Shown here: one piece after another, positions 2,082-56,059 of the stretch
Layout: each line of letters begins with the position of its first letter
Numbering within the stretch: position 1 is the first letter of the stretch
IMG/VR virus record: IMGVR_UViG_3300027793_000052
Coordinates: 62,001-126,000 of that record
Strand: one strand, 5' to 3'
Length of the DNA: 64,000 nt
Position numbers and translations under genes: made by a program
Notes under the pieces: generated by a model
Seen by the model: only the letters and a program-made list of their open reading frames with translations
What the model was told of the DNA's origin: nothing
Databases searched by the model: none

Positions 2082-2636
2082 ATGAAATTTATATTAACCC
2101 TTATATTATCAGTAATAACCTTTATTGGTGTTTGTCAAACAAGGGTAACAGCCGTTATAATTAATGGTGATACCTTACCCTATGTTAAATTAAAACCTTT
2201 TATAATAAAGGAAAAGGGTAATTGGGGTGTATTTGTTTCTTGGGAACGTAGTCGTTTAGAAAAAAAAGTTAGAAAAGTTTTACCTTTGGTCAAGGTGCTA
2301 TCCCGAGAACTTAATAACAGAAAAGAAAACCTAAATTCTACAAATCCAATTATACGTAAAAAAGAACTTCATGAGATGGAAGTTTATTTAAAAAGTAATT
2401 ATGGTAAGACAATAAAAGATTTAACCATAAGTGAAGGTAAGGTATTATTAAAACTTATTCATAGAGAAAATGGTATGTCACCTTATGAAATTTTAAAAAT
2501 GTTAAAGGGTGAAAGAAAAGCAGAATTTTGGGATGGATTTGCAGGACTATTTGGCACAGATTTGGAATCCAAATGGGATCCTGAAGGTGAAGATAAAATG
2601 TTAAATCAAATTGTTATCAAAATAGAAAATGATTAA
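2082..2636 (+). CDS. DUF4294-family protein (Bacteroidota)
   Basis: signal peptide; GDTLPYVKL, LTISEGKVLLKLIHRE and FAGLFG..L...WDPEGED motifs. Confidence 0.75.
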   Translation: MKFILTLILSVITFIGVCQTRVTAVIINGDTLPYVKLKPFIIKEKGNWGVFVSWERSRLEKKVRKVLPLVKVLSRELNNRKENLNSTNPIIRKKELHEMEVYLKSNYGKTIKDLTISEGKVLLKLIHRENGMSPYEILKMLKGERKAEFWDGFAGLFGTDLESKWDPEGEDKMLNQIVIKIEND

Positions 2637-3062: not shown

Positions 3063-3728
3063 GTGAGAAATCTTATTAAATCTATTTTAAAAGAAGAATA
3101 CGAAAGGGAACCACAAGTTGGTGATAATTTGTTATGCCACACTGTTACACCTGCTTTTGAACCTTATTTAACAGTAAATAAAACATATAGAGTAATTGAT
3201 GTAACATATTTTGATAATAGATTAGAGGTTTTAGTTATAAAAGACGATACTGGTATAAATCGAATGTTTACAATAAAACCAGTAATGGGGCATTCTTATA
3301 AAACATGGTTCCATTTATTAGATGATATTGATGATGAATATTTTTTTGAAAATATGTCGGAATCTGAAGAGGGTGATTTTGATTGGGTGGGTGATATCAT
3401 TGAAAAATCCAACATGTGGGAAACATTACCAAGAAATGGAAATTATATATTGTTTTATTTTTATCCAAAAATATCTTCAGAACAATTTAAAAAATATGTA
3501 ATCCCAATTTTATTAGAACAAGACATTAGAATTGAAAGTTCTGCGTCACGTAGTGGTATGGATCATCTAGAAATACATCCTAGTACACGTATACAATATA
3601 ATAATAAACTTGTTGCCTTGTTTGGTGATGTTGAATATTTCGATAAAGATGAAGAGGGATTTATTAAACAGTTATCAGAAGACGGTTCAACACCTATAAA
3701 CGGTAGAGAATTTTTTAACATACCTTAA
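3063..3728 (+). CDS. leader-bearing two-module protein (putative head-internal protein)
   Basis: GATATTTATA upstream; MRNLIKSILKEE leader; internal FFENMSE-SEEGDFDWVGDII linker. Confidence 0.7.
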   Translation: MRNLIKSILKEEYEREPQVGDNLLCHTVTPAFEPYLTVNKTYRVIDVTYFDNRLEVLVIKDDTGINRMFTIKPVMGHSYKTWFHLLDDIDDEYFFENMSESEEGDFDWVGDIIEKSNMWETLPRNGNYILFYFYPKISSEQFKKYVIPILLEQDIRIESSASRSGMDHLEIHPSTRIQYNNKLVALFGDVEYFDKDEEGFIKQLSEDGSTPINGREFFNIP

Positions 3729-3746
3729 ACAAATCTTTTAAAAACT

Positions 3747-3790
3747 AAAAACCCCCAATCTAATATTACATAGATGTGGGGGTTTTGTTT
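3747..3790. terminator. intrinsic terminator, probably bidirectional
   Basis: AAAAACCCCCAATCTA...TAGATGTGGGGGTTTT hairpin. Confidence 0.7.
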
Positions 3791-4010
3791 GCCGATAGAT
3801 TTATTCACATGAAAGGGAACCTTTGTTGACACCGTAAGGTAGGTGTGACAAGAGGGTTTTATCGATGTTATAATCGAGATCGGTCTTGTTTGTGTTTATA
3901 ACACGTGTTAAGGGAATCGGTGGCTTTTGGGTTAAGGTGCCGTGATCGTTGATTCCCGTGTGGATGATCAGTCCACTGATTAAACCTTGTGAGAGTGTGA
4001 AAGTTCTCCA
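3791..4010. ncRNA. candidate structured ncRNA A
   Basis: no ORF; ~43% GC; hairpins ACACC/GGTGT, GGGAATC/GATTCCC, GTGGA/TCCAC, TCGAT/ATCGA. Confidence 0.4.
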
Positions 4011-4049
4011 ATTTTTTTATTTTAACTATTGTGAAGTTTAATAAAAATA

Positions 4050-4305
4050 CTATGACCCGTTAAAAAAAGAACAACATCTTTGAACACCACGATTGCTTTT
4101 ACTTTCCCTGTTTTTAGAGAGGTTTCAGCCTGTGTCAGTCAATTATCGGTTTCACGATGGTTCAGGACTTAGCTTCCTCTGTGGTAAACATTTACAGTTT
4201 TTATGGTGTTACAGTTTTTATTTATGAGTGGTGTCATGTCGGATGGTCGTGTTACTCTTTACTCGGGAGATTTAGGACCTTTACTTTCCACTCATTCACT
4301 TCTTC
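4050..4305 (-). ncRNA. candidate structured ncRNA B
   Basis: no ORF; minus-strand TAACTTTG promoter at 4305-4312; inverted repeats 4224-4231/4288-4295, 4083-4089/4204-4210, 4118-4122/4176-4180. Confidence 0.45.
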
Positions 4306-4438
4306 AAAGTTAAACATTCTTTTTTAAACTATCAAGAGGTTTTTAAAAATTATTTTTTTTATTTTCCCCTTACCGTTATCAGGTTGTTTAACTTAACACA
4401 ACAAAGATATGTAATTTATTTCATACCGTCAACAAAAT
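4305..4438 (-). promoter_or_regulatory. two tandem minus-strand Bacteroidota-type promoters
   Basis: CAAAGTTA (4305-4312) and CAAAGATA (4402-4409) read TAnnTTTG on the minus strand; no ORF downstream. Confidence 0.5.
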
Positions 4439-4529
4439 CTTTGTTTTTTTTTTATTGTTGTGTTTTTATGTCAAATAACTTGTACAAATATATAAACAAT
4501 TTTTAACATAGACAAGATATTTATTGTAA

Positions 4530-5948
4530 ATGGAAAAAGAAATTTTAGATTTTATCTTTCAAAGTGGTGGTATTGGTTTACAGTTCTACAATCCTGAAGA
4601 ATATAATAATGAAGGTATTGTTTATACTATTATAGATTCTGATGAAAAGTATATTGATTTACAGTGGGAAGACGATGAAGAAATTTACTATAATAGTGAA
4701 CCTTGGCACGTTTTTTTATCACATTTAGAGAGTGGTTTTTATGTTATTAAAAATATGGATTTCTTATGCCAAACTATGGGTGTTGATTTAGATATTGATG
4801 ACGTTTTTGGTTCCTTAAATGAAAATGAATCGTCACATATAGTCGGTAATATAGAAAGATTATTACAAGAATGGAATTGGGTTGTGATGCCTGTGTCAGA
4901 CATCACAGAAGAACAGTTCCAAGAATTACAATTATATCTATACTCAAAAGGTATATATTGGCAAAGTGGTGGTGATGATGTTAGAAGTATGCCACCTGAT
5001 TTGGGTTGGATATATATCGGAAGATACCCGTATTATAATGGTAGGCCACCACATGCACAAAGAGCAACCATAGGTTGGACATTTTACCAAGATGGTATAT
5101 GGAGACCAGAAGAGGATCCAAGTTACGCTGAAGACTATAGATTATGGAATCCTAAATATAAAATAGTTAGTTATTACGATATTATTTTAGACGATGATGA
5201 TTTAGATATGGATGATGTTTTTGGTTCCTTGAATGAAGGAACTTATCAACCTATTTTAAATTTGAGGTTTGACCCACCATTGAGAAATGAATGGGAGTTA
5301 CTTGAAGTAATGAAAGTAATTCAAAGAAATTACGACGATGTCACTTGGCGGTCAGGAGGTATACCAACTAATTTACCTTATTTGGATCAGATATGGGAAG
5401 ATCCTTCAGAGGGTATTTGGTATATAACAATTGGTTTTTTTAAATCAAATCCGAAGAATATAACTTACACATCCGGTGATATAGATGACCCGTCTATATC
5501 AGATGAGGAACATCATATGTATAAACATTTAAATGGAAGAGAATGGGTTAGAAGTCACGACTTTGATGCGGATGAAACTAGTGATATGTTTGGTCCTTTA
5601 ATTGAGACGAATGAATTTGATTGGGTTGGTGATATAATTGATGATGATGCTAATAGATTTTCAAAAATACCAAGTTATAATCATGAAAGATATATATTAC
5701 GTTTTTCACAACCTATGCTTGCTAGTGATGTTATGGATTTATTAAAGTTTTTAAAAGAAATTGGTTGGGATGTTGGTGACAATATTGTGCGTGATTATAA
5801 TTTTGATGATTTAGTTGAATACTCTTCAAATGGAACTGGTTATATACATTTGAGGCCTAATGGTAAAGTTACTTATGCCGATGATGTTAAATTATTTTCA
5901 GATTATACCGACATTAAACTTGATACTGTCAGACAAATATGGGTATAG
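4530..5948 (+). CDS. four-module acidic protein (putative polyprotein)
   Basis: ATATTTAT upstream; linkers LDIDDVFGSLNE, LDMDDVFGSLNE, FDADETSDMFGPLIE. Confidence 0.75.
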   Translation: MEKEILDFIFQSGGIGLQFYNPEEYNNEGIVYTIIDSDEKYIDLQWEDDEEIYYNSEPWHVFLSHLESGFYVIKNMDFLCQTMGVDLDIDDVFGSLNENESSHIVGNIERLLQEWNWVVMPVSDITEEQFQELQLYLYSKGIYWQSGGDDVRSMPPDLGWIYIGRYPYYNGRPPHAQRATIGWTFYQDGIWRPEEDPSYAEDYRLWNPKYKIVSYYDIILDDDDLDMDDVFGSLNEGTYQPILNLRFDPPLRNEWELLEVMKVIQRNYDDVTWRSGGIPTNLPYLDQIWEDPSEGIWYITIGFFKSNPKNITYTSGDIDDPSISDEEHHMYKHLNGREWVRSHDFDADETSDMFGPLIETNEFDWVGDIIDDDANRFSKIPSYNHERYILRFSQPMLASDVMDLLKFLKEIGWDVGDNIVRDYNFDDLVEYSSNGTGYIHLRPNGKVTYADDVKLFSDYTDIKLDTVRQIWV

Positions 5949-5969: not shown

Positions 5970-5997
5970 AAAATCCCTCCAGTGTGAGGGATTTTTT
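5970..5997 (+). terminator. intrinsic terminator
   Basis: AAAATCCCTC-CAGTGT-GAGGGATTTTTT. Confidence 0.75.
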
Positions 5998-18024: not shown

Positions 18025-18831
18025 ATGAAAAATCTAATTAAAAAGATATTGAAGGAAAATGATTTTAATCCAGATGATTTTAGTTGGGTTAATTTGGAAT
18101 TGGAACCAATTAGAGATCGTAAACATAGATCGGAAATTATTGAAGATACAATAGCCAAAGTTAAAGAATATAAGGGTTGGAGAATATATAAGGATAAATT
18201 TAATGGTGTGGTTTATTGGGATGGTACTGAAGGTTACACTGGTATGGCGACACCTGAATGGGATGAGGCTTTTAAAATACCTGTTGATATAAGCTATCAT
18301 AATGATTATGATAATGTAACTGTTATACATACCCCTGAATTTAAATACGTTGTGGAGTTACAGGAATGGTATAGTAAAAATTATTTTGAGATTGTGTATA
18401 AAGTACTAACCGATTATATAAACCAAGATGAGGTACCTGGTATAATTGAAACAAAAAGTTTAATTAAAAAGATATTGAAGGAAAATGAATGGGAATGGGC
18501 AGAAGATTTGATTGGTGGTGATAGTTTATATGCCAAAGCCATGTCATTAATTCCTGAAAACCTTAATGAATATAATAGATGTCTTATTTTATTTGAGAGG
18601 GAATTAGATTGGGATGAAGCCCAAATTTTATTAAAAGTCCTTAGGGAGAAAGGTTGGAAGATAACTGAAGTTTCGGATGATAGTAGAATTAAATGTATTC
18701 TTAAATATAGTAAAACTCACGAAGGATATGTTAATTTAAAAAATCCTTTTATTTCATTTGGGGATTCTAGGTATACGTACAACAATGTTAATTCTGTTAA
18801 GTGGGAAGATGTTTTAAAAATTAAAATTTAA
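18025..18831 (+). CDS. leader-bearing protein made of two fused leader genes
   Basis: MKNLIKKILKEN at the start and KSLIKKILKENEWEW internally (18451-18500). Confidence 0.75.
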   Translation: MKNLIKKILKENDFNPDDFSWVNLELEPIRDRKHRSEIIEDTIAKVKEYKGWRIYKDKFNGVVYWDGTEGYTGMATPEWDEAFKIPVDISYHNDYDNVTVIHTPEFKYVVELQEWYSKNYFEIVYKVLTDYINQDEVPGIIETKSLIKKILKENEWEWAEDLIGGDSLYAKAMSLIPENLNEYNRCLILFERELDWDEAQILLKVLREKGWKITEVSDDSRIKCILKYSKTHEGYVNLKNPFISFGDSRYTYNNVNSVKWEDVLKIKI

Positions 18832-19174: not shown

Positions 19175-19861
19175 ATGAAAAATTTAATTAAAAAGATATT
19201 AAGGGAAAATGAATGGGAATGGGCGGAGGAAACATTGGACCGAGCAGTTGATCCTTATAGAATGGATGTAAATGAATTAGTTTATTTTCTTAATCAATTT
19301 TTTCAACAAAATAAATCCCCAAGATTTAATAGAACATATGTGGCAGAATATGATAGAGGTACCTTTACCATTGGTGATGAAACAGGATTATATGTTTCAA
19401 TGTTAGATACGGATGAAACTTTTTATTATGCCATAAAATCTTTAAAAAGAAGCATAATAAGTCTAACCAATAACAGAGAACTATTGGATGAATATCAGGA
19501 TTTATATGATACATTAATACCTTTGATAAAAGAAGATATAATGGAACAGGCAAACGATATGGACTGGTTTAATATCGATGATATGCCAGAACCAAAAGGA
19601 ATTGCCCTAGCAAATATAATTGAAGAATATTTCAAAGATAATAATTTACCTTATCATATTATGATAAGACAAGATAATGCCGTTATATACATCAAAGATA
19701 CCAATTTTATATATTTTAGCGGATGGACCGAATTATTCACCATGGATAATATTATTAATGATATAATGATTGATTTAGATTCCTTACAATCATCAAAAAG
19801 CATTAATAGATGGAATATCTTATACAACAATCTTAAATCTTTATTTGATAAATTAAAATAA
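19175..19861 (+). CDS. leader-bearing protein with two tandem homologous modules
   Basis: MKNLIKKILRENEWEW; internal PLIKE-DIMEQANDMDWF junction. Confidence 0.75.
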   Translation: MKNLIKKILRENEWEWAEETLDRAVDPYRMDVNELVYFLNQFFQQNKSPRFNRTYVAEYDRGTFTIGDETGLYVSMLDTDETFYYAIKSLKRSIISLTNNRELLDEYQDLYDTLIPLIKEDIMEQANDMDWFNIDDMPEPKGIALANIIEEYFKDNNLPYHIMIRQDNAVIYIKDTNFIYFSGWTELFTMDNIINDIMIDLDSLQSSKSINRWNILYNNLKSLFDKLK

Positions 19862-24038: not shown

Positions 24039-25046
24039 ATGTATCAACCAAAGCTATATTTAAGATTCGATAAGCCAATTCAAAATGATAAAATCGGTAT
24101 TGAACAATTGAACAAAATTTTGCGTTTGATTGAAATTGTTTACCCTGAAGTTAGTTGGTGGGATGGTACATCACCATCTGGATGGAATCCATTTACTGGT
24201 GAAAATGATGATATACCAGATATAGTTAAATCTTTAACCATTGGCTATTGGCCTGATGGACCAAATAAATTAACTTACGGTATTTGGGATACAAATGACT
24301 ATAACTATTCAAATGCTATTGATGGTTGGGCATGGTTTAACAATTTTAATTTTGATGCGGATGAAACCAGTACAATGTTTGAACCCATTGATGAATCCAT
24401 TAAACGTGATTGGACGATTGATGATTTAAAATTTTTACACGATGATAAGGTTTTATTTTATGAAATTGGTTCCGATGGGAATGCAATAAAACACCCTGAT
24501 ATTATGGGTGATGACATGGGTGATATTTTATATATCGGAATTCAAGATGGTAGATATACTGTTTGTTATAAATTAGAAGGTGGTGAAGATATAAAAGGTA
24601 TTGAAGAATGTTTAATGTCGTCTGAAAATTCTATTCTTAAATGGTTAAATGACGGAACATTACAACCAACACATAAATTTATAAATTTTGATATAGACGA
24701 TATGCTTCAACCAATTAACGAGTCCAATCGTAAAAAAGACGATATTTTTAGAATTGGTGATTATGTCATTGTTAACGGTTATTATAACGGCGACATAGGT
24801 TCAAGTAATAATAAAATCGTTTATTTTGATGATGATTTTGCTCAAATAATTGATACCTATATGGGAAGTGATGGTTTATGGTATTTGTTAGAATTTGAAA
24901 CTAAAAGAATTAATTTCCCAAAATCAACACCAAGTAATCAAATTTATCTTATGAACGATAATTTTGATGGAAGTAGTTTTAAAATGGAAATTACCATCGA
25001 ATACCCCGAAGAGTTAGATTTGGACACAATTTTTGGGTATAATTAA
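24039..25046 (+). CDS. three-module acidic protein (putative polyprotein)
   Basis: start re-assigned to ATG 24039 after ATATTTAT; linkers FDADETSTMFEPIDE and FDIDDMLQPINE. Confidence 0.7.
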   Translation: MYQPKLYLRFDKPIQNDKIGIEQLNKILRLIEIVYPEVSWWDGTSPSGWNPFTGENDDIPDIVKSLTIGYWPDGPNKLTYGIWDTNDYNYSNAIDGWAWFNNFNFDADETSTMFEPIDESIKRDWTIDDLKFLHDDKVLFYEIGSDGNAIKHPDIMGDDMGDILYIGIQDGRYTVCYKLEGGEDIKGIEECLMSSENSILKWLNDGTLQPTHKFINFDIDDMLQPINESNRKKDDIFRIGDYVIVNGYYNGDIGSSNNKIVYFDDDFAQIIDTYMGSDGLWYLLEFETKRINFPKSTPSNQIYLMNDNFDGSSFKMEITIEYPEELDLDTIFGYN

Positions 25047-25498: not shown

Positions 25499-26173
25499 AT
25501 GGGTTTAAGAAATAAAAATATAAACGAAAATCAAAACTTCTTAGATAAGAAATATATAATATTTGACGACGAGGCTACCAAACGAGATATTATAAAAATT
25601 TATAAGTTACTAATATCTATGGATGTTACACCTTTATCTGTTATTAGGAGTACTAGAAATACAACAGAAAGTTGGATTTATGCTTACGTGGATGAGATTG
25701 AAGATTTTATCGATACATATGGTGGCGCTTATTTTAGAATATGGGTTACAAGTTATGATAAACAATTAGCCTTAGATTACGGTGCTATACATAAAAATGA
25801 TTTAAATATTGATAGTGTTGAAGATAGTAGATTAATTTATTTTAAAGATTTGTTAGACACTTCTGATATAAATTTTTTTCCAGAAAATCTTAATGAAAAT
25901 TATAAAGATAATGACACACCTGAAGTTGGTGATAATTTAGTTTGCCACAAGTCTGTAGTTATGCAATACAGTGGTGAAGTTGAAGCAACTGAAGGTAAAT
26001 TGTATGAAATAGTACTTGTAACACATGATAGATTAGCTATAATAAATAATTCTAATCATGAACATTTTTTTTCTATAAAAAAAGGTGACGATAGTTTTTA
26101 TAAAAAATGGTTTAGCCCATCTATGTCTATTGAAATAGACACTTTTTTGAACCTTTGGATTAGTCATTTTTAA
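25499..26173 (+). CDS. two-module protein
   Basis: ATATTTAT upstream; NINE at N-terminus; internal INFFPENLNE linker; second module similar to 3063 module 1. Confidence 0.7.
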   Translation: MGLRNKNINENQNFLDKKYIIFDDEATKRDIIKIYKLLISMDVTPLSVIRSTRNTTESWIYAYVDEIEDFIDTYGGAYFRIWVTSYDKQLALDYGAIHKNDLNIDSVEDSRLIYFKDLLDTSDINFFPENLNENYKDNDTPEVGDNLVCHKSVVMQYSGEVEATEGKLYEIVLVTHDRLAIINNSNHEHFFSIKKGDDSFYKKWFSPSMSIEIDTFLNLWISHF

Positions 26174-37388: not shown

Positions 37389-39071
37389 ATGAAAATTATT
37401 TTAGATAAAATAAGAGAAGTATTAACGGAAAGTAGGGTTGAAGATGTAAAAAAGAGATTCCCCAACGTTGATTCACAAATTATAGATTATTTCGTAAATA
37501 ATGACCCATCCGGCAATCAAAAATATTTGGATTGGATGGTTAAAGCTATAACACACAAGCCAACATTACAAACTATTGGTAATATAATGGGTAATAATGA
37601 ATACCTTGATGGTGGTTATTGGGGTGGGACAGCCGCTTTTATTTCTGTTTTAATTAATAGATTCCATAACCTATTACCGTATTTAGTACATGAAGAAAAC
37701 GGTAAAAAGGTGGGTACTACTGATTTATATCAATATAAGTTTAGTGATAGTGAAATGATAAATTATTTGATTTTTGATTTAGATAGAGCTGAAGAACGTA
37801 AAAAAAAGAAAGAATTATCTAAAAAATTAAAATCTGAAGCTGATAAAATTTATGAAGATAAAAATTGGTTGGTTGTAAGAGCTAGGACTTGGGAGGCTTC
37901 CTGTCATTATGGTGCTGGTACAAAATGGTGTACAACTTCAAAAGAAAGTGATACCCATTTTAAACGTGAAACAGACCGTCAATTTTTGATTTATGTAATT
38001 AATAAAAATGAAACTTCTGAAAATCCATTATATAAGGTGGCTTGGCAAATACCTTATGATAAAAAAATTAATAAATACATGAAATTTGGTTTAGAAGGTG
38101 ATTGGGAGATTGATTGGTCAAAGATTAAATTGTGGAATGCCGAAGATACAAATATTGCAAATCGTTTAGGTAGTGAATACTTACTTTCTGTACCTAAAAA
38201 AATTAAGGCAGAGATTTTAAAATACATGCAAAATAAAATGGATGAGATGTATGAAAATATGGGTTATGTTGATGATCCAAATATTCAGGCATTGGTTACA
38301 TATTTGGGTTTAACACAAGAAGAGGCTGACGAGGTAATAGAAGAAAGGTATACACATTATGGTTTAAAAATTTATACAAATGATGATCATGGTTCATACG
38401 CTGTGGGAATATTTGAAGAGGCACAAAACGCTTTAAGAGAATGGGCTGAAGGTTATTATGATGACATTGGTCCTTTTGAAATAATGGGTGATAGAATTAA
38501 ATATTATGTCACAATACCTGATGCTGATAATATAGCCTCGGAAGATGCTACTTTTTATGTTGATGATATTAGTGATGATGATTTAATTGATTACGCCAAA
38601 GGTTATAGTGATGATATTGATAATCTTATTGAGGAGTATAATATTAATAGTGGTATATTGGAAGGTTTTGACGATGAAATATCTGAATTGATGACCAAAT
38701 TAGAACAACAAGAAATATCGGAAGAAGAATATAAAAAAGAAATGGAAGAATATGAGGCCGAAAAAGAAGAAATGGAAGAATATCAACCAAAATTATTAGA
38801 AAGAATACGTGAAAAATATAGGGATGAAATTTATAAAGATAAATTACGTCAGATGGAAGATGACCCATGGGATTGGTTGCGGGAAATGGGTTGGGCAGAT
38901 AGAAATGGTTTAAGTAAAAACGCAATAAATAGTGGTCTTGTTGAAATTAATCGAGAATCTTTAATTGATGACCTTGTAGATGGTTGGGATTTTGAGGTAC
39001 TTAGTGATGATGGTCGGTGGGATGAGGTCAATGTTGATAGTAGAACTTATTATATATTTAATGTTTCATAA
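37389..39071 (+). CDS. YGxxTxWC-family protein, paralog 2, with acidic C-terminus
   Basis: LTESRVED, NDPSGNQKYLDW, ASCHYGAGTKWCTT. Confidence 0.7.
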   Translation: MKIILDKIREVLTESRVEDVKKRFPNVDSQIIDYFVNNDPSGNQKYLDWMVKAITHKPTLQTIGNIMGNNEYLDGGYWGGTAAFISVLINRFHNLLPYLVHEENGKKVGTTDLYQYKFSDSEMINYLIFDLDRAEERKKKKELSKKLKSEADKIYEDKNWLVVRARTWEASCHYGAGTKWCTTSKESDTHFKRETDRQFLIYVINKNETSENPLYKVAWQIPYDKKINKYMKFGLEGDWEIDWSKIKLWNAEDTNIANRLGSEYLLSVPKKIKAEILKYMQNKMDEMYENMGYVDDPNIQALVTYLGLTQEEADEVIEERYTHYGLKIYTNDDHGSYAVGIFEEAQNALREWAEGYYDDIGPFEIMGDRIKYYVTIPDADNIASEDATFYVDDISDDDLIDYAKGYSDDIDNLIEEYNINSGILEGFDDEISELMTKLEQQEISEEEYKKEMEEYEAEKEEMEEYQPKLLERIREKYRDEIYKDKLRQMEDDPWDWLREMGWADRNGLSKNAINSGLVEINRESLIDDLVDGWDFEVLSDDGRWDEVNVDSRTYYIFNVS

Positions 39072-39108: not shown

Positions 39109-40398
39109 ATGACATTTTTTACTAATTTAACACTTAGAGGTATTAAAAAATCAGCATTAACACATGCTGAATTAGATAATAATTTTGTTGCTCTCGACAG
39201 TGGGTTATCTAATTTACAAAACCAAGTAAGTTTTATAAGTGGCGGTAGTCAAACTCTTGCTCAAACATTGTCTAATGGCAATACATCAGGAGCGTATGAT
39301 ATTTTAATAAACACTGGTCAAAAAATAGGATTTAAGGATGGTAATAATACTTACACAACATATATTTCCAACAACCAAACTCAGGCCGGAAATAGAACGG
39401 TTTATTTACCTTTATTTGATGGACAAATTGCATATCACGCCACCGGATCACCGTTAACAACAAATTATATCTTAAAAGGCACTACAAATGGGGCTATTAC
39501 TTCGAGTAGTTTAATATACGACAATGGGACTAATGTAGGTATAGGAACGGCAAGTCCTTCTTATAAATTACAAATAAATACAGCATTAGCCGATTTTGAT
39601 GGTTTACAAATAAAAAACACAAGTACAAATGCAGCGGCAGGTGCTTATTTGTTATTTACTAATGGAAGTGGTGCTAATGCTGAAATTGTTTTAAAACAAG
39701 GTTCGTCTTTTGCTGGATATGGAGCTGCAAATGACATGACTTTTAGAGCTGGTGTAGGAGCAGCTTATATGAATTTTGTTTCTGAAAGTACTAACGGTTT
39801 TAGATTTTATCCAAGTGCAGCTGGTGGAGCATCTTTAGCAACATTAACTCCTACATTAGCTATCGCAGGAACCGAGAGAGTTGGTTTTGGTATATCGTCG
39901 CCAAACGCTAAAGCGCATATTGTGGGTGCAACCTCCGCCGCCGGCGCATACGCATTAAGGGTAGATGATAGTTCAAATAGTCCATTATTTTGTGTTCAAA
40001 ATGATGGAACGGTAGGAATTGGAACAATTAGTCCGGTTGTAAAATTACATGTAGAGGGGTTATCTTATTTAAACGGTGGTGCAAGGATTACAAGTGTCGG
40101 TATTGGTGGATATTGGGGTGGATTAGCAAATGAAATTTTAACTTTACAAGCAACAACAGGAAATCCATTAATCTTACAATATACAGAAGTTGGGCAAGTA
40201 GCTATTGGAACAAATGCACCAAACACATCATCGATATTAGATATTGTTAGTACAAATAAGGGTGTTTTATTGCCCCGAATGACTACCGCACAAAGAACTT
40301 CTATTCCTTCCCCAGCTATAGGGTTAATAGTTTATCAAACAGATGCAACAGAAGGTCTTTACATATATAAATCTAGTGGTTGGACATTCATAGCATAA
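39109..40398 (+). CDS. tail fibre-like protein 1
   Basis: Gly/Thr/Asn-rich; repeated VGIGT.SP; ST.KG.L.PRMT C-terminal module. Confidence 0.75.
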   Translation: MTFFTNLTLRGIKKSALTHAELDNNFVALDSGLSNLQNQVSFISGGSQTLAQTLSNGNTSGAYDILINTGQKIGFKDGNNTYTTYISNNQTQAGNRTVYLPLFDGQIAYHATGSPLTTNYILKGTTNGAITSSSLIYDNGTNVGIGTASPSYKLQINTALADFDGLQIKNTSTNAAAGAYLLFTNGSGANAEIVLKQGSSFAGYGAANDMTFRAGVGAAYMNFVSESTNGFRFYPSAAGGASLATLTPTLAIAGTERVGFGISSPNAKAHIVGATSAAGAYALRVDDSSNSPLFCVQNDGTVGIGTISPVVKLHVEGLSYLNGGARITSVGIGGYWGGLANEILTLQATTGNPLILQYTEVGQVAIGTNAPNTSSILDIVSTNKGVLLPRMTTAQRTSIPSPAIGLIVYQTDATEGLYIYKSSGWTFIA

Positions 40399-40440
40399 AA
40401 ATTATTAATATATAATAAAAAAATAAAAAAATAAAACAAC

Positions 40441-40710
40441 ATGAAGTACAAACATTTAAAAACAACAATTTTAGCAGGAAGTGCTAACGTAGATGTTCCA
40501 GCTAATACATCTACTTTTCAGGCGAATATCAAATTTGAAATCTTACCTGAAATAGAAGGTCATGAAATACCTGAACAATACAAAACACCTGAGTTAACTT
40601 TCTTTGGATTAGTATTTAATACATTAAATATGGAAGAAGTACTAAATCAGGCGGACAGTAAGGGTGTTGAAAGATTGAAAGAGGTTTATGGGGTGACTAA
40701 TATAGAGTAA
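40441..40710 (+). CDS. small protein after fibre gene (possible assembly factor)
   Basis: position between the fibre genes. Confidence 0.5.
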   Translation: MKYKHLKTTILAGSANVDVPANTSTFQANIKFEILPEIEGHEIPEQYKTPELTFFGLVFNTLNMEEVLNQADSKGVERLKEVYGVTNIE

Positions 40711-40722
40711 ATAACTTAAAAA

Positions 40723-42453
40723 ATGGGAAATTTAATATTAAAAGAACAATCGGTATCAGGTTTTACTGCTGCTCCATTAAACAAAATAAAAATTGCTTAT
40801 GGAAATGATGATAACCTATACAGAATTGATGATGCTAATAACGCGGTTGTAATTGGTGGCGGTGGTGGTAGTCAAACTCTTGCTCAAACTTTAGCTCTGG
40901 GCAATACATCAGGAGCGTATGACATCTTAATGAATACAACCCAACGTATAGGGTTCAAAGATGGGGATAACACTTACACAACTTATTTAAGTAACAACAT
41001 TACAACTGCGGCCAATAGAACGGTTTATTTACCATTGTTTGATGGACAGTTAGCTTATCATGCTACTGGAACACCACCAACAACAAATTATGTTTTAAAA
41101 GGAACAACTAATGGGGCTATTACTTCGGGGATAATCTACGACAATGGAACAAATGTTGGTATTGGGACATCATCACCAACAACTAAATTATCTGTTTATG
41201 CAGGAACAGTAACTAATACAGATTTATTTTCAGTAAAGATAGCTTCAAATCAAGCAGCATTAAATGTTAATGATGCGAATTGGGTTTCCATTAATTCAAA
41301 CACAAGAGTTGGTACTGAAAGTTTATATATTAATGGTACGCAAGTAACAAGTGAAATATCTATATTAGGAACTAATATGCTTAGATTTGCTGATAGTGGT
41401 TTTTCGACTATAACAAGTCCGAATTTGGATTTTGTTGGAACAATGAATGGTGGTTATCAATTTAATGGTTATGGAACATTACCGCACGGTAATTCTAACT
41501 TTTTATCGTTAATACCAAATACTAATAACGGTTCATTAGCTACTTTCTTTAATAATTTAGTTAGAATAAAGGCAAACGGTAACACTGATACACAAAAATA
41601 TTTTGCAGTAACCAGTTTCACAGCGGATACTATACCAACAGATACTTTAACTTATTTTAAAGGTTCCACCTCCGCAGCAGGTGCATATGCTTTAAAGGTA
41701 GATAACTCAAGTAGTAATCCTTTATTACATATAGCCAACACTATTAACGGACAAGCAAATGGGTTAAATCAAGGAAATGGCAATTTGGCGATGTATTACG
41801 ACACATCGGGGGCCGGATATGCTGTTTTACGTTCATTAAATTATAATTCCGTTTCTTTTGGCACACATTCATCACCTTATAGAATTATATTAGGTAGGGA
41901 TGGAAATGTTTATACAAATGACAGGTTGTTTGTGATGTTAAATGATCCCATTGCCGCAGTTACCGAAACGGTAAGTGTTGGTAGAACTACTCATGGAGTT
42001 AATGGCTCTACATCATCAATGGTCGTATTAAATATAACGATGGGTTCAACTAATTCAGGTTTAGGGTTATTTGCTATTGGTGCCACTGGTCAAGGTGGAA
42101 CAACCGGAAACGCAACGATGAATTTTAAATATGATCCAATAAGTTACAGTGGGACAGTAAATTCAGCTAATAACAATTATTATCGTGTTGCAATTGGTAA
42201 ATCCCCATCAACGGATTATAGATTAGAAATTTCAGGTGGAACAAGAATTGAATCGGATAGTTATACCACGTCGGCTGCTGTTTTAGAGTTATCGTCTACT
42301 ACACAAGGTCTATTATTACCTAGAATGACATCTACACAAGCTAGTGCTATAACGGCCGTAAATGGTTTAATTTTATATGTAACCGATACTAACTTAACAT
42401 TCACTTCTGTAGGTTTTTGGGGTTATGAGAATGGGTCATGGGTAAAACTTTAA
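40723..42453 (+). CDS. tail fibre-like protein 2
   Basis: shares ~105-aa module and C-terminal module with fibre 1. Confidence 0.75.
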   Translation: MGNLILKEQSVSGFTAAPLNKIKIAYGNDDNLYRIDDANNAVVIGGGGGSQTLAQTLALGNTSGAYDILMNTTQRIGFKDGDNTYTTYLSNNITTAANRTVYLPLFDGQLAYHATGTPPTTNYVLKGTTNGAITSGIIYDNGTNVGIGTSSPTTKLSVYAGTVTNTDLFSVKIASNQAALNVNDANWVSINSNTRVGTESLYINGTQVTSEISILGTNMLRFADSGFSTITSPNLDFVGTMNGGYQFNGYGTLPHGNSNFLSLIPNTNNGSLATFFNNLVRIKANGNTDTQKYFAVTSFTADTIPTDTLTYFKGSTSAAGAYALKVDNSSSNPLLHIANTINGQANGLNQGNGNLAMYYDTSGAGYAVLRSLNYNSVSFGTHSSPYRIILGRDGNVYTNDRLFVMLNDPIAAVTETVSVGRTTHGVNGSTSSMVVLNITMGSTNSGLGLFAIGATGQGGTTGNATMNFKYDPISYSGTVNSANNNYYRVAIGKSPSTDYRLEISGGTRIESDSYTTSAAVLELSSTTQGLLLPRMTSTQASAITAVNGLILYVTDTNLTFTSVGFWGYENGSWVKL

Positions 42454-42549
42454 TGGTAAAAATATTACAAAATAATTTTATAAAATTATATTTTACTTTT
42501 TATAAAATTATTTTATTTTTTAAATATAAAATAAAAATTTAAAATAAAA

Positions 42550-42732
42550 ATGAAAATGAAAGATAAAGAAATAACATTAAAATTTAACTTAGATGAAGTT
42601 AATGTAATTTTGACCGGTTTAAGTGAGTTACCTAGTAAAATAAGTTATGGTTTAATAACTAAAATCAAAAATGACGCTCAAAATCAAATAGAAGATGAGG
42701 ATGCAAATAAGTTAGATTTAAAAAATGATTAA
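42550..42732 (+). CDS. small fibre-associated (chaperone-like) protein
   Basis: L..DEVNVIL.GL.ELP.K.S..LI.KI motif; follows the fibre gene. Confidence 0.55.
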   Translation: MKMKDKEITLKFNLDEVNVILTGLSELPSKISYGLITKIKNDAQNQIEDEDANKLDLKND

Positions 42733-42767
42733 ACAAAAAACCCCACAATTTGTGGGGTTTTGTTTTT
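42731..42767. terminator. bidirectional terminator
   Basis: AAAAAACCCCAC-AATTT-GTGGGGTTTT between convergent genes. Confidence 0.8.
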
Positions 42768-43872
42768 AAAGTACAAACTCTGTATCAAACTCTTTTTTAA
42801 ACATATAAAGACCAGCATGTTTTCTTAAATCATTTTTAGAGTGTTCACCAATACCCATACCATAATCGTGTGAACCAACATCAGTTAAAGAATTTAATAA
42901 ATCCCAAGTCGTCATATCGGTTTTGGCGTTTTTCCAATGACGGTTTGTCAGTGTTTCCAAATTAATACCTCTTTCTTTATAAGAAGATTGAATTTCACCT
43001 ATTGGAAAAAATTTATCCAAAACCGCTTCAACACGAGCATCATTTTTATCTGTAACCTTACTACTAACCAAATCACGGAATTTTAAAACTTCATTATATG
43101 AAGCTGAAATTGTACTCATTTTTTGAACTTGATTGGTAAATATACCTTGAAATTTCTTATTGGTTTCACTTAAAGACTTAACTTCTCTCATAAATTTGTT
43201 GATGTTATCAACCGAGTTACTTTCCAAACGTGGACCCATTTCAAGACGACGAGGACCAATTAAACCATTTTCACAAACTAAACGAATTACATACGGGTCA
43301 ATAGCAATATCTTCAGTGGGACCGGCTGTTACAATAACACCTGTGTGAAAACTTTCATCTTTTAAATCAGGTACGTCAAAAGCCCATCCACTTTTAACTG
43401 TTGATATTTGAATGTTACCCTCACCAGAAATAGACATACTACCAATGTCTAAATTATTATCATTAATCACATTTTCAACCATATCAAAATAAAAATCAGG
43501 TGAAATGTAAGGTTTAGACGCGTCAGTGATAGCCACAACCATTTTAGTTGATGGTGAAATGTAAATTGACACCAACATATCTTTTGATGTGGCAATTTTA
43601 TTCTTAATAACTTTAACTAATTGATTACGAGAATTCATACCAAAAATATCGGTAAATTTACCCATAAAAGCGTCAGTTATTTTGAGAGTTTTAAGTAAAG
43701 ATTTGAAAGCGTTTGAAGATAGTTTTAAACTAACGCCTTCAATATTAATACCACCGTTACGATTTTCAGGATTTTCAAAGTCAATATTTAACTCGGAGAT
43801 TGTTAAGTTTTTACGAATTGGGTAATTGGATTTTACCTCTTTTTTAAATGTTTCAAATTTTGTGTTTTCCAT
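42766..43872 (-). CDS. DUF932-like protein
   Basis: RLVCENG motif, T.WDLLNSLT; early promoter upstream. Confidence 0.55.
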   Translation of the reverse strand: MENTKFETFKKEVKSNYPIRKNLTISELNIDFENPENRNGGINIEGVSLKLSSNAFKSLLKTLKITDAFMGKFTDIFGMNSRNQLVKVIKNKIATSKDMLVSIYISPSTKMVVAITDASKPYISPDFYFDMVENVINDNNLDIGSMSISGEGNIQISTVKSGWAFDVPDLKDESFHTGVIVTAGPTEDIAIDPYVIRLVCENGLIGPRRLEMGPRLESNSVDNINKFMREVKSLSETNKKFQGIFTNQVQKMSTISASYNEVLKFRDLVSSKVTDKNDARVEAVLDKFFPIGEIQSSYKERGINLETLTNRHWKNAKTDMTTWDLLNSLTDVGSHDYGMGIGEHSKNDLRKHAGLYMFKKEFDTEFVL

Positions 43873-45182: not shown

Positions 45183-46889
45183 TTAATCACCCCACACCCA
45201 TTTTTTATTACCACAATCCCAAATAATGTTGTAACCACGTTCATACATTATTTGTTTTTCAGTCTTATTCGGATCATAACCATCTTTAATTAATTTATCT
45301 TTCCTAAAATTATATCTGTGCATTCTAACCAAGTCTTTGAAATACCAATAATTTAATTCGGTATTTTTTAAAAATTTAAAGCCCAATTTTTCATATAAAC
45401 CACCATCAAAATACCTGTTATCGGAATAAGATACGACATTTTTTGGTTTATAATTTTGTATGAAATGTCCGAACAATTTTGAAGCCCCACCAACTATTTT
45501 TGTGTTTAATTTATTACAAAATCTTAACATCTCATATTCATAATTGTTGTTACCCACACCTGAACGATTACCGAATGTCATAACAGAAACCAATTCGTCT
45601 TTATAATATAAACCCAAATTTATAGACGCGTTAACAGACCCTTGAATGTGGTTATTACCCAAAAATTTCGATGATTCTTTATTGGTTATTGTTTTTATAA
45701 CACACTTTCTTGCGAATATATTGGTATCGAATATGTTTAAATTAGCTTTTATAATAGATAATACAATATCTTTTTTAAATAACCACTCATCTTCAAAAAT
45801 ATGTAATAGTTTAATATTTTTATCTTTACATAATAACGTCTTATTTATGTGATATGTTTTACTTTTATTTATTTCACTATGCCAATACAATCCATCATAT
45901 TCTATGGCTAAATTTTTCTGCGGTATGAAAATATCCAATTCACAACCACCGAGTATCTTTTTATTATTAATCTCAACTAACATCCCAGTCAAATTCTCTA
46001 TATAACTAACAATATCTCTATGTGGTTTGGTGTAGTTTGATCCGTTAAGTGGGAAACAATTGATGCATATTTCATACCCCAACCTATTTCTTTGATTAAA
46101 TAAATAATTGTCTATTTTAAAAATTTTGTCACATTTATCACATTTTAATGTTAATACTTTATTTTCGTAATCAATAAAAGTATACCCACTGAAATTATTT
46201 AATTTATCTATTATTTTGTTTTTAAAAATCACATTTTTAAACTCTTCACTTTGTGAGTAGTTCTCTACATTAAATTTTGTTAAATTAGTTTTTTTAGATT
46301 TTTCTTTAACTTCTTCTAACTGAAAAGGGTTTGATACGCCGTATTTTTTAATAAGATTCTCTTTTCTTAAATTCTTTATATCGTCAGAATACCAATGGTG
46401 GGTAAAACCGTATCTTTCTAAATTAGTTTTTTTTACTTTATTTTTTATTTCATCATTATGTAAACTACATGTTACACCATACTTTTCTAAATTAGTTTTT
46501 TTTACTTTATTTTTTATTTCATCATTTCTTAAAGGACTTGTTACACCATATTTTTTTACATTAGTTTCCTTTATTTTATTTTTAGTATTTTGGTTATTTA
46601 CACCACATTTTATAGAACAGTTTTTATTATAACCCTTTTTTAGTGAGATAAATTTCACATCATTTACCCCACAAACCTCACATTTAGGTGGTTTGTTAGT
46701 ATTATTTATATATAAATAAATTTTCTCTTTAAAAGTTAAGCTGTCTTCTTTATTGAAGTTTATTATTTTTGAGTATAAATCGTAGTTATTGTCCCGTAAC
46801 CAACTTTCTCTAACCCTAAGACCGTTATTATTTTCAGTAAAATAATCCAGTAAATTTATATTATCCATATTGTATGACTTATTTATCAA
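45183..46889 (-). mobile_element. Hef-like / Vsr-type homing endonuclease
   Basis: KTNLEKYG repeats; ELDIFIP..NLAIEYDGLYWHS; FARKC; GGASKLF; IWDCG. Confidence 0.75.
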
Positions 46890-52834: not shown

Positions 52835-53006
52835 ATATAAAGAAATTAAAACGGGTTTTATCTTTAAAGTTACGAATTTCACCACCACTTTGGATGGTAT
52901 TGTGGATACTGTACATTTGAAAAGAATAGATACTGATGATACTTTAGAGGTGGGCGAAGATAGATTTCAGAAAAACTTTATAAATGTTTATGATGAACAA
53001 AAATGA
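52818..53006 (+). CDS. small hypothetical protein
   Basis: ORF overlapping both neighbours. Confidence 0.5.
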   Translation: MKLKNKYKEIKTGFIFKVTNFTTTLDGIVDTVHLKRIDTDDTLEVGEDRFQKNFINVYDEQK

Positions 53007-54951: not shown

Positions 54952-55254
54952 ATGAAAAAATTATTAATTATTACAAGTGTGTTATTAACTGGATGTGTAA
55001 CACTTAAAAAGTATAATACTTCTGGATTCTCCAGTAATGGTCATTATATACTATATAATTCAGATACAGTGGCGAAGTTAAGTAATATTGAATATTCTTT
55101 GGATGGTGGTAAATTTGTTAAGGAAATGACATTTAAATTACTTGATATGAGGCATGGTCAGAATGTCGAAAACATGATTTATTACATACACCAAAAGAAA
55201 TCTGATTGGGAAATTGAAATTGATTATCCTGTTGAAAATTATAAATTTGATTAA
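54952..55254 (+). CDS. lipoprotein
   Basis: lipobox LTGC. Confidence 0.6.
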   Translation: MKKLLIITSVLLTGCVTLKKYNTSGFSSNGHYILYNSDTVAKLSNIEYSLDGGKFVKEMTFKLLDMRHGQNVENMIYYIHQKKSDWEIEIDYPVENYKFD

Positions 55255-56030: not shown

Positions 56031-56038
56031 ATATTTTA

Positions 56039-56059
56039 ATAAATATCCGGAATATTTAT
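56039..56059. promoter_or_regulatory. divergent pair of ATATTTAT (putative late) promoters
   Basis: ATAAATAT-CCGGA-ATATTTAT between divergent genes. Confidence 0.6.

What the first reader, a model, noticed from the sequence alone, without database searches (positions are those of the whole stretch)
4530..5948. Multi-module polyprotein with repeated acidic-aromatic-(L/I)xE linkers
Seen: four ~100-140-aa modules separated by LDIDDVFGSLNE, LDMDDVFGSLNE (33/36 nt identical; 4788-4823 vs 5202-5237) and FDADETSDMFGPLIE-TNEFDW. Similar linkers occur in 3063 (FFENMSE-SEEGDFDW), 19175 (PLIKE...DMDWF), 24039 (FEPIDE, LQPINE) and 25499 (FFPENLNE). The D/E-F/W-D/E-W motif that follows the N-terminal leaders also follows several internal linkers. 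Inference: prohead-protease-cleaved polyproteins that release several small effectors from one gene.
Basis: partly seen in the sequence, partly recalled or inferred. Interest (0 to 1): 0.72.

Follow-up and report, generated by a model that had tools for sequence, protein, structure and literature searches.

The report
Modular phage protein with cleavage-like junctions
A gene of an uncultured freshwater T4-like jumbo phage strings four independent small domains together with a conserved acidic-aromatic peptide ending in Leu-x-Glu, the cutting signature of T4-type head proteases, so it is probably cut into separate small proteins inside the capsid, although no cleavage has been observed.

Summary
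Window 4530-5948 is one intact 472-aa ORF. It has three junction peptides, LDIDDVFGSLNE, LDMDDVFGSLNE (33/36 nt identical) and FDADETSDMFGPLIE, the last followed by EFDWVGDII.

The window lies in a 318-kb phage record that encodes a T4-type prohead protease (Peptidase_S77) and a gp23-type capsid protein.

An exhaustive search found 37 relatives of 85-1039 aa. They are strings of up to about 8 modules from at least 14 families, in shuffled orders. The same peptide joins them: D-x-D-x-T-S-D-(I/L)-F-(D/N)-(S/Q)-L-N-E|S.

- Close relatives lack module 2 exactly between the two repeats.
- The modules also occur as stand-alone genes.
- Module 3 folds alone (pLDDT 85), with a disordered tail that holds its most conserved residues.
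- Glu at the predicted P1 position is present in 88 of 98 internal tails and in 0 of 10 tails at true C-termini.

Best reading (about 0.5): a polyprotein cut at (L/I)-x-E by the prohead protease.

Three points are not shown. No cleavage or packaging has been observed. This protein lacks the 11-aa MKNLIKKILKE leader carried by at least 17 other genes of the phage. The modules have no recognisable fold, so "effector" is a guess.

In passing: the ORF-free 0.8 kb upstream gives a hugely abundant, conserved RNA.

The parts
4517..4524 (+). Promoter-like octamer ATATTTAT, 5 nt upstream of the ATG
   Evidence: The same octamer lies 4-30 nt upstream of about 70 ORF starts in the genome. These include most leader-bearing genes, the prohead protease and the terminase, but also a helicase. 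It also lies 4 nt upstream of the relative P0029. Its temporal class is not resolved.
4530..5948 (+). The 472-aa multi-module ORF (P0001), stop codon included
   Evidence: The identical protein is on 9 contigs. No Pfam or PHROG family matches.
4530..4787 (+). Module 1 (aa 1-86)
   Evidence: The same module occurs stand-alone (P0019, P0027, P0033, P0039; 85-89 aa). It also occurs at internal or last positions of other strings.
4788..4823 (+). Junction tail 1, LDIDDVFGSLNE (aa 87-98); predicted cut after E98
4824..5201 (+). Module 2 (aa 99-224)
   Evidence: It is absent, exactly between the two repeats, from P0002 (98% identical elsewhere) and P0003. In P0004 and P0007 it sits between different modules.
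5202..5237 (+). Junction tail 2, LDMDDVFGSLNE (aa 225-236); predicted cut after E236
   Evidence: 33/36 nt identical to tail 1.
5238..5561 (+). Module 3 (aa 237-344), the YQPxLNLRFDPP type
   Evidence: There are 58 copies in relatives. Several proteins start directly with it as M-YQPKLNL. AF2 gives pLDDT 85.2 and a compact alpha/beta domain. The paralogue at window 24039-24395 matches with E 1.5e-16.
5562..5606 (+). Junction tail 3, FDADETSDMFGPLIE (aa 345-359); predicted cut after E359
   Evidence: In the model the tail has pLDDT 41-47 and reads as disordered. Its F, L and E are among the few invariant or near-invariant columns of the 51-copy alignment.
5607..5945 (+). Module 4 (aa 360-472), starting with the head motif TNEFDWVGDIID
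   Evidence: It is homologous to aa 154-266 of ORF 18025-18831 (E 4e-9). There the module follows an internal copy of the leader SLIKKILKE. It is also homologous to ORF 3063 aa 105-189. The stand-alone relative P0025 (122 aa) carries the N-terminal leader MKDLIRKILKE before it.
5970..5995 (+). Terminator-like hairpin followed by a T run
3063..3728 (+). Paralogous two-module ORF: leader MRNLIKSILKE, module, junction FFENMSE|SEEGDFDWVGDII, module
18025..18831 (+). Paralogous ORF with the leader at its N-terminus and again internally (aa 146), before a module-4-type domain
19175..19861 (+). Leader-bearing ORF: MKNLIKKILRE|NEWEWAEE, with an internal PLIKE...DMDWF
24039..25046 (+). Paralogous three-module ORF starting directly with a module-3-type domain; junctions MFEPIDE|S and MLQPINE|S
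25499..26173 (+). Paralogous two-module ORF with the junction INFFPENLNE|N. Its second module is homologous to the module that follows the leader in ORF 3063

Best explanation
P0001 belongs to a phage family of cassette polyproteins. These are small autonomous domains of about 95-135 aa. Each ends in a flexible acidic-aromatic tail, D-x-D-x-T-S-D-(I/L)-F-(D/N/G)-(S/Q/P)-L-(N/I/Y)-E, and the domains are fused in frame.

I propose three steps.
1. The precursor is incorporated into the prohead.
2. The phage's T4-type prohead serine protease cuts after the Glu of each (L/I)-x-E junction (E98, E236, E359).
3. This gives four small proteins that stay in the head and enter the host with the DNA, as T4 internal proteins do.

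The 11-aa N-terminal leader MKNLIKKILKE on at least 17 other genes of this phage would be the equivalent of the T4 capsid targeting sequence. The tail may be a second, C-terminal form of such a signal.

The repeated junction also serves as an in-frame recombination joint by which modules are gained, lost and swapped.

Shown: the anatomy, the modularity, the shuffling, the presence of the protease and capsid genes, and the junction-specific conservation of Glu. Inferred: packaging, cleavage, and delivery into the host. Unknown: what the modules do.
For: **The phage has the T4-type head machinery**
- It encodes a Peptidase_S77 protease (E 7e-31; E 8e-30).
- That protease matches the solved T4 gp21 structure 5JBL (E 4e-20) and keeps the GELNHP and SSRG motifs.
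- It encodes a gp23-type capsid protein (E 6e-63; matches to T4 gp23 structures).
- T4 gp21 cuts after L/I-x-E. It cuts core proteins into several fragments and removes 10-residue capsid targeting sequences from internal proteins (PMC9026906; PMC5694885).
- The capsid protein's own N-terminal region has ALLYE51|N and TLISE60|T close to the position that aligns with the T4 gp23 maturation site.

**The junction logo fits a cleavage site**
- Over 96 junctions with full flanks in relatives, P3 is L (88) or I (8). P1' is small: S 72, G 7, T 4.
- A test anchored only on the upstream half of the tail finds Glu at P1 in 88 of 98 internal tails. The Glu background is 7.9%. It finds Glu in 0 of 10 tails that end a protein (nominal Fisher p 5e-9).
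- Those C-termini are real stops inside their contigs.
- So the Glu-Ser pair is needed only where another module follows, whatever the family of that module.

**The tail behaves as a linear motif, not as part of the fold**
- Module 3 is predicted as a compact domain (pLDDT 85.2) with the tail at pLDDT 41-47.
- Tail residues F, L and E are invariant or conserved in at least 90% of 51 copies. Only three other columns reach that level.
- Codons at the conserved positions vary synonymously (TTT/TTC; TTA/TTG/CTN; GAA/GAG; TCN/AGT). Selection therefore acts on the peptide.

**The modules are autonomous and shuffled**
- At least 14 families occur in many orders, and stand-alone versions exist.
- There is a precise module-2 insertion/deletion between the two repeats in relatives that are 98% and 77% identical.

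**Leader and junction are interchangeable**
- Module-4-type domains follow FGPLIE| in P0001.
- They follow an internal SLIKKILKE| in ORF 18025 and the N-terminal MKDLIRKILKE| in P0025.
- The ORF 3063 N-module follows the leader there but follows FFPENLNE| in ORF 25499.

**Weak support**
- [LI]xE is under-represented inside module bodies (154 observed, 181 expected, z -2.2). It is over-represented in the rest of the proteome (1207 vs 987).
Against: - There is no proteomic, structural or biochemical observation of cleavage or of virion location. The phage is uncultured.
- P0001 and several relatives lack the N-terminal leader: they start directly with a module. If the leader is the only ticket into the prohead, they would never meet the protease.
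- The tail is kept on last modules and on stand-alone modules, where nothing needs cutting. It therefore has some function other than, or besides, being a cleavage site.
- T4 gp21 needs few determinants beyond L/I-x-E. The 14-residue conservation is not explained by cleavage alone.
- A few junctions have M or V at P3 (NMSE in ORF 3063, NVSE in genome ORF 40204-42819).
- The module bodies still contain many [LI]xE, and the depletion is modest.
- The shared upstream octamer also precedes a helicase gene, so co-expression with head genes is not established.
Confidence: 0.5

Rival explanations
1. An uncleaved beads-on-a-string protein. The domains stay linked, and each tail is a short linear motif that binds a common partner. 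That partner could be a host hub protein or a phage assembly or scaffold protein. The tail could also act as a C-terminal tag. The Glu-Ser pair would simply be a conserved linker.
For: - The tail is present on last modules and on stand-alone modules, so it works without any cut.
- It is disordered and more conserved than the domains, as binding motifs are.
- P0001 has no capsid-targeting leader.
- The extended conservation exceeds what gp21-type cleavage needs (PMC9026906).
Against: - Glu at P1 is present in 88 of 98 internal tails and in 0 of 10 terminal tails. The small P1' residue is conserved although the following modules belong to many unrelated families.
- A passive linker of three residues would not be this constant.
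- The exact match to the specificity of a protease that the phage encodes would be a coincidence.
- The N-terminal leaders that replace the tail upstream of the same module types also end in L-x-E.
Confidence: 0.27
2. A polyprotein that is cut at the junctions, but not by the prohead protease inside the capsid. A Glu-specific host protease or another phage protease would process it in the cytoplasm. The products would act during infection without being packaged.
For: - The junction-specific Glu argues for cleavage as such.
- The absence of a leader on P0001 fits a protein that is not packaged.
- The upstream octamer is shared with non-structural genes too.
Against: - No other candidate protease was identified, although I did not scan the whole genome for proteases.
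- L/I-x-E with a small P1' residue is the known T4 gp21 motif.
- gp21-type enzymes are active within proheads according to the T4 literature.
- The leader-bearing paralogues look like T4 internal proteins.
Confidence: 0.12
3. The repeated linkers are only recombination joints or relics of recent duplication. They would act at the DNA level and have no role as peptides.
For: - Tails 1 and 2 are 33/36 nt identical.
- Relatives differ by a precise module-2 insertion/deletion between them.
Against: - Across relatives, the conserved residues are encoded by different synonymous codons.
- The peptide is conserved in proteins whose module bodies share 20-40% identity.
- The junction-versus-terminus difference in Glu is a protein-level feature.
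Confidence: 0.06
4. An artefact: neighbouring small genes fused by assembly or sequencing error, or a decaying pseudogene.
For: The modules also exist as separate genes elsewhere.
Against: - The identical ORF is on 9 contigs from several samples.
- Dozens of relatives from independent assemblies have the same in-frame architecture, up to 1039 aa with no stops.
- The DNA runs laid on the stretch show no frameshifting insertions or deletions in the main allele.
Confidence: 0.02

Closest known systems
T4 internal proteins (IPI, IPII, IPIII, Alt) with the capsid targeting sequence, processed by gp21
   Same: - The phage has a T4-type prohead protease and a gp23-type capsid protein.
- It has many small, fast-evolving proteins of unknown fold.
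- A 10-11-residue conserved N-terminal leader ending in L/I-x-E sits on at least 17 genes.
- The variable cargo lies behind a constant signal.
   Different: - T4 internal proteins are single proteins with one N-terminal signal.
- Here up to about 8 modules are fused, and the repeated signal is a C-terminal tail on each module.
- P0001 itself has no N-terminal leader.
- The leader sequence (MKNLIKKILKE) is unrelated to the T4 one (MKTYQEFIAE, from my own knowledge).
T4 core proteins gp22, gp67 and gp68, which gp21 cuts into several fragments
   Same: One polypeptide is cut at several L/I-x-E sites inside the prohead (PMC9026906).
   Different: - Those fragments are scaffold debris that mostly leaves the head.
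- Here the pieces are folded domains with conserved boundaries.
- The sites here sit in a 14-residue conserved context.
Inner-body and ejection proteins of phiKZ, 201phi2-1 and SPN3US, processed by gp175 or gp245
   Same: - Jumbo phages with large paralogue families of head-internal proteins.
- A gp21-related protease cuts them after Glu at short motifs, sometimes at several sites per protein.
   Different: - Those motifs are S/A/G-x-E with long N-terminal propeptides.
- No repeated shuffled modules with a constant junction peptide are described there.
Polyvalent proteins of phages and conjugative elements (Iyer et al. 2017, PMC5512222)
   Same: - 2 to 15 unrelated domains in one phage polypeptide.
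- They are predicted to be packaged, delivered with the DNA and released by proteolysis.
   Different: - Polyvalent proteins are built from recognisable enzymatic and DNA-binding domains and usually carry their own peptidase domain.
- Here no known domain or embedded peptidase was found.
- Here the modules are small.
- Here a constant junction peptide marks every boundary.
Encapsulin cargo-loading peptides (from my own knowledge, not tested here)
   Same: A short, disordered, conserved terminal peptide on otherwise unrelated cargo proteins, which directs them into an HK97-fold shell.
   Different: - There is no sequence similarity.
- Whether the tails bind the capsid or scaffold is unknown.
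- Encapsulin signals are not cleavage sites.

Membership tests
T4-type internal protein / CTS cargo | The genome encodes a gp21-type (Peptidase_S77) prohead protease | tested here: met
   (E 7e-31, 8e-30; E 4e-20 to 5JBL).
T4-type internal protein / CTS cargo | The genome encodes a gp23-type major capsid protein | tested here: met
T4-type internal protein / CTS cargo | An N-terminal leader of about 10 residues ending in L/I-x-E on the protein itself | tested here: not met
   P0001 starts MEKEILDFIFQ, which is the start of module 1. The leader is present on the neighbours ORF 3063, 18025 and 19175 and on at least 17 genes in all.
T4-type internal protein / CTS cargo | Found in virions, with the leader removed by the protease | not testable with these tools
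   The phage is uncultured and no proteomics exist.
Protease-processed viral polyprotein | Independent domains separated by a recurrent site that matches a virus-encoded protease | tested here: met
   The specificity comes from the T4 literature; it is inferred, not measured, for this enzyme.
Protease-processed viral polyprotein | Cleavage at those sites is observed | not testable with these tools
   The complex prediction of protease with linker gave no answer.
Polyvalent proteins (Iyer et al. 2017) | Several unrelated domains in one polypeptide of a phage or mobile element | tested here: met
   Four modules with no mutual similarity; relatives have up to about 8.
Polyvalent proteins (Iyer et al. 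2017) | Contains the characteristic hub or effector domains (zincin-like peptidase, MuF, ART, methylase, ArdC-N and others) | tested here: not met
   No Pfam or PHROG match for P0001. No consistent Pfam match over 51 module copies. No fold match.

The most novel reading that the evidence does not exclude
A clade of freshwater T4-like jumbo phages has a portable peptide of about 14 residues. It works at once as a C-terminal capsid-targeting signal, as a prohead-protease site and as an in-frame recombination joint. This would let the phage assemble, package and inject combinatorial sets of small host-takeover or anti-defence domains from single genes: a natural cassette system for capsid cargo. 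The protease's own C-terminus (…KILNSLNKFLK) resembles the tail and would use the same docking site.
Probability: 0.25. Interest if true: 0.85.

Novelty: new variant of a known kind. Interest (0 to 1): 0.62.

Why it matters
T4 internal proteins are the classic case of proteins injected with phage DNA to disarm host defences. Their leader has also been used to load foreign proteins into capsids.

A natural system that fuses many unrelated small domains through one constant junction would be new in three ways. It would show how jumbo phages diversify and stoichiometrically package a large arsenal. It would define dozens of new domain families with exact boundaries, ready for functional screening. 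And it would offer a second, internal or C-terminal signal for loading cargo.

The idea is directly testable with one recombinant protease and one substrate.

If the proteins are instead uncleaved, the tail is a strongly conserved linear motif whose partner is worth finding.

Tried and rejected
- **AF2 of the whole protein** with a 4-sequence alignment gave pLDDT 37.8 and was uninformative. The question whether the four modules pack together therefore rests on shuffling and on module 3 alone.
- **Complex prediction** of the protease with residues 214-256 scored 0.00: no answer, and not evidence either way.
- **Fold searches** with the module 3 model found nothing. PDB Foldseek gave no hit at E<=0.001. 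VIA-align wide gave a best Z of 3.5. AFDB clusters gave a best E of 0.014 with TM<0.5. BFVD gave none. The Atlas gave TM of about 0.5 to unnamed phage proteins, DUF1642 and DUF3850. The Atlas feature search gave none.
- **Family and database searches** found nothing. Pfam and PHROGs on P0001 gave no match. Pfam on 51 module copies gave only scattered chance hits. The phage GenBank collection gave no match by DNA or protein. IMG/VR held only identical copies.
- **My first impression that modules 2, 3 and 4 are homologous to each other** was not borne out by BLAST or iterated HMM searches.
- **Late-promoter reading of ATATTTAT.** It precedes the protease, the terminase and a tail protein, but also a helicase, so the class is unresolved.
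- **Depletion of [LI]xE inside modules** is real but modest (z -2.2). I treat it as weak support only.
- **Asn-cyclisation self-cleavage at L-N-E** was considered and rejected, because P2 varies (N, Y, I, D, T, H, S) while Glu is constant.
- **A module-2 deletion joint** was looked for in four public runs and not seen.
- **For the upstream RNA**, Rfam gave nothing. Folding z-scores were -0.85 and -1.2, not significant. Scans of viral and metagenome contigs found only the same phage.
Full report
**What is there**

Window 4530-5948 (+) is one open frame of 472 aa, kept as P0001. A promoter-like octamer, ATATTTAT, lies 5 nt before the ATG. A terminator-like hairpin follows at 5970-5995.

- Residues 87-98 (LDIDDVFGSLNE, nt 4788-4823) and 225-236 (LDMDDVFGSLNE, nt 5202-5237) are 33/36 nt identical.
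- The repeat finder extends this match to 43 nt at 91%.
- Residues 345-359 (FDADETSDMFGPLIE) are followed by TNEFDWVGDII. Its DNA is 90% identical to a stretch of ORF 3063.
- The four modules between the linkers show no detectable similarity to one another.

P0001 has no Pfam or PHROG match and no match in the GenBank phage collection.

**The genome**

The window is bases 62001-126000 of a 317,983-bp IMG/VR virus record, estimated 96% complete. G+C is about 29%. The phage is found in freshwater metagenomes.

It encodes a T4-type prohead protease.
- Peptidase_S77 matches with E 7e-31 and 8e-30.
- The solved T4 gp21 structure 5JBL matches with E 4e-20, and the GELNHP and SSRG motifs are kept.

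It also encodes a gp23-type major capsid protein. Portal, scaffold-like and small core-like genes lie beside these. The nearest capsid proteins belong to Flavobacterium phage immuto, Microcystis phage Mel-JY01, uncultured huge phages and Rhodothermus phage RM378. So this is a distant T4-like jumbo phage.

According to the T4 literature:
- gp21 cuts after L/I-x-E;
- it cuts core proteins into several fragments;
- it removes the 10-residue capsid targeting sequence from internal proteins (PMC9026906; PMC5694885; PMC3012670).

**A family of strings of modules**

The word-indexed search gave three close relatives.
- P0002 (98% identical) and P0003 (77%) are module 1 + module 3 + module 4. They lack module 2 and one linker exactly between the two repeats.
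- P0004 puts module 2 between two different modules.

The exhaustive phmmer search gave 37 relatives of 85-1039 aa. Reading them shows the same construction throughout.
- The pattern F-x-x-[LI]-x-E occurs 99 times in 17,069 residues and cuts the proteins into segments of about 95-135 aa.
- The logo is (V/I)-D-(Y)-D-(D/E)-T-(S)-D-(L/I)-F-(D/N)-(S/Q)-L-N-E | S-(E).
- Clustering the segments gives at least 14 module families plus singletons, in many different orders.
- Module-1-type domains exist as stand-alone 85-89-aa proteins.
- Module-3-type domains often start a protein directly (M-YQPKLNL...).
- A module-4-type domain exists as a 122-aa protein behind the leader MKDLIRKILKE.

One relative, P0029 (1039 aa), lies on a 76-kb contig among many small ORFs. 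The same octamer lies 4 nt before its ATG, and a leader-bearing gene lies nearby.

**The leader and the head motif**

At least 17 ORFs of this genome begin with M-(K/R)-x-L-I-(K/R)-K-I-L-(K/R)-E. One ORF (window 18025-18831) has a second copy inside it. The codons vary synonymously among copies.

After the leader's Glu, and after many internal junctions, comes (D/E)(D/E)-F-x-W-(A/V)-x-(D/E)-(I/L). Of 31 such motifs in the predicted proteome, 18 have [LI]xE ending within 9 residues upstream, against a 12.4% background. The nominal p is 2e-9.

The same module families follow either a leader or a junction.
- Module 4 of P0001 (after FGPLIE|) is homologous to the domain that follows the internal leader in ORF 18025 (E 4e-9). 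It is also homologous to the second domain of ORF 3063.
- The first domain of ORF 3063 (after the leader) recurs after FFPENLNE| in ORF 25499.

**Is the junction a spacer, a motif or a cleavage site?**

Four results bear on this.

1. With a 51-copy alignment, module 3 is predicted as a compact alpha/beta domain (pLDDT 85.2). The last 12 residues, which are the tail, have pLDDT 41-47.
2. In that alignment F11 and the tail's F118 are the only invariant columns. Besides P33, W37 and G100, only the tail's L121 and E123 are conserved in at least 90% of copies.
3. The conserved residues use different synonymous codons in different copies. The constraint is therefore on the peptide.
4. Many proteins end in a tail that stops at or just before the predicted cut...IFNQLD*...IFNQID*...LFNKLD*...SFFD*...VFGDL*...FNSLYDN*. 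Three of these were checked and are real stops inside their contigs.

A test anchored only on the upstream half of the tail gives Glu two residues after the L/I in 88 of 98 internal tails. It gives Glu in 0 of 10 terminal tails. The nominal Fisher p is 5e-9; the copies are related, so these p-values are indicative only.

So the tail belongs to each module and has some role of its own. The Glu and the small residue after it are kept only where another module follows, and that module can come from any family. This is what a P1-P1' pair of a cleavage site would look like. A passive linker would not show it.

The phage's own capsid protein has ALLYE51|N and TLISE60|T near the position that aligns with the T4 gp23 maturation site. 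LYE is also the second commonest junction variant.

**Verdict on mechanism**

The most likely reading (about 0.5) is a polyprotein cut by the T4-type prohead protease at E98, E236 and E359. The repeated junction also serves as an in-frame recombination joint, and the module-2 insertion/deletion shows this directly.

Against this reading:
- there is no observation of cleavage or packaging;
- P0001 has no N-terminal leader;
- the tail has an unexplained extra function;
- a few junctions have M or V at P3.

The main rival (about 0.27) is an uncleaved multidomain protein whose tails are binding motifs. Cleavage by another protease outside the capsid is possible (about 0.12). A purely DNA-level role and an assembly artefact are largely excluded.

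What the modules do is unknown.

One weak lead is worth noting. The pattern [ILVM][FL][NDG][SQ]L[NY] occurs only four times in the 101-kaa proteome. Two copies are the P0001 tails. One lies at residues 261-266 of the 270-aa protease (KILNSLNKFLK*). One lies near the N-terminus of a 274-aa protein in the head-gene region. This would fit a shared docking site, but with two extra hits against about 0.7 expected it is not significant.

**Comparison with what is known**

The closest known systems are:
- T4 internal proteins with their capsid targeting sequence;
- the multi-site cutting of T4 core proteins;
- the processed inner-body and ejection protein families of phiKZ-like phages;
- the "polyvalent proteins" of Iyer et al. 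2017.

This case differs from all of them. It has small, unrecognisable, freely shuffled modules. It has a constant, roughly 14-residue junction tail on every module. It has no embedded peptidase. I did not find such a system described in the papers searched. That library is not exhaustive. I rate it a new variant of a known kind.

**Side observation**

The ORF-free 0.8 kb just upstream (window about 3804-4470) has contig depth 13,659 to about 97,800 in two freshwater metatranscriptomes. The flanking genes have depth 4-127 in the same runs, and two DNA runs are flat.

The stretch is 83% identical overall, and about 95% over its first 200 nt, to the corresponding gap in a relative. In that relative the adjacent protein is only 52% identical.

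No Rfam family matches. The folding energy is not exceptional on either strand. It looks like an abundant, conserved phage non-coding RNA of unknown kind.

Noticed in passing
window 3804-4470 (ORF-free stretch 3729-4529): This looks like a very abundant, conserved non-coding RNA. Contig depth is 13,659 (X16) and 23,967-97,793 (X10) in two freshwater metatranscriptomes. The flanking genes have depth 4-127, and DNA runs are flat. The stretch is 83% identical to the equivalent gap of a relative whose adjacent protein is only 52% identical. There is no Rfam match and no significant folding z-score. A sigma-70-like promoter lies at 3845-3874 on the + strand. The strand and the ends of the RNA are not determined.
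   Followed up: partly
window 3063, 8111(-), 13850, 16712, 18025, 19175 and genome-wide (genome C1: 6264, 8063, 11853, 39472, 48675(-), 138005(-), 145827, 150098(-), 224619, 235363, 235808): At least 17 ORFs start with the 11-aa leader M(K/R)xLI(K/R)KIL(K/R)E, with synonymous codon variation. The leader is often followed by (D/E)(D/E)FxW(A/V). It looks like this phage's counterpart of the T4 capsid targeting sequence.
   Followed up: partly
window 37389-39071, 61707-63998; genome C1:45795-47282(-), 55049-56590: A second family of large proteins (495-923 aa) has a different conserved N-terminus...(I/L)(I/L)xE|GR(L/K/V)EDV(K)KKYP.V. It again ends in L/I-x-E. Pfam gives nothing useful for 37389-39071.
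   Followed up: no
window 4517-4524 and about 70 other ORF starts in the genome: The octamer ATATTTAT lies 4-30 nt upstream of start codons, which implies very short 5' leaders. It precedes the protease, the terminase, tail-like genes, the leader genes and P0001, but also a helicase. It is also present before P0029 in a related contig.
   Followed up: partly
genome C1:135696-138005 (-), next to the protease gene (outside the window): A 769-aa protein has the leader, then two small modules joined by KINE| and NINE| junctions, then a PolyA_pol head domain of the CCA-adding enzyme type (E 2e-35). It may be a nucleotidyltransferase that carries the packaging-type leader.
   Followed up: partly
genome C1:138056-138868 (protease, residues 261-266 of 270) and C1:147606-148430(-) (N-terminus): Both proteins contain KILNSLN, which resembles the junction tail (I/L)F(N)(S)LNE. 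The pattern occurs only 4 times in the proteome, and 2 of those are in P0001. It may be a shared docking peptide, but it is not statistically secure.
   Followed up: partly
window 49684-52203 (-), 53003-54163 (+), 45186-46889 (-): The phage encodes a ClpB/ClpA-like double AAA+ chaperone of 840 aa (AAA_2 E 2e-70), a thymidylate synthase (E 7e-89) and a protein with DUF7487 plus a weak Mom-like match.
   Followed up: no
window 4641-4832: DNA run X12 holds a second allele of the end of module 1 and the first junction. It has 26 differences and 2 indels in 192 nt, at similar depth to the reference allele. This indicates population-level variation around the junction.
   Followed up: no
window 2082-2636; locus L027 536-1090: The gene order DUF4294 protein, small ORFs, leader-type protein, ORF-free RNA region, module-string gene is conserved in a related 18.7-kb contig. 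That contig also carries Pyr_excise and T4_Y16D genes.
   Followed up: no
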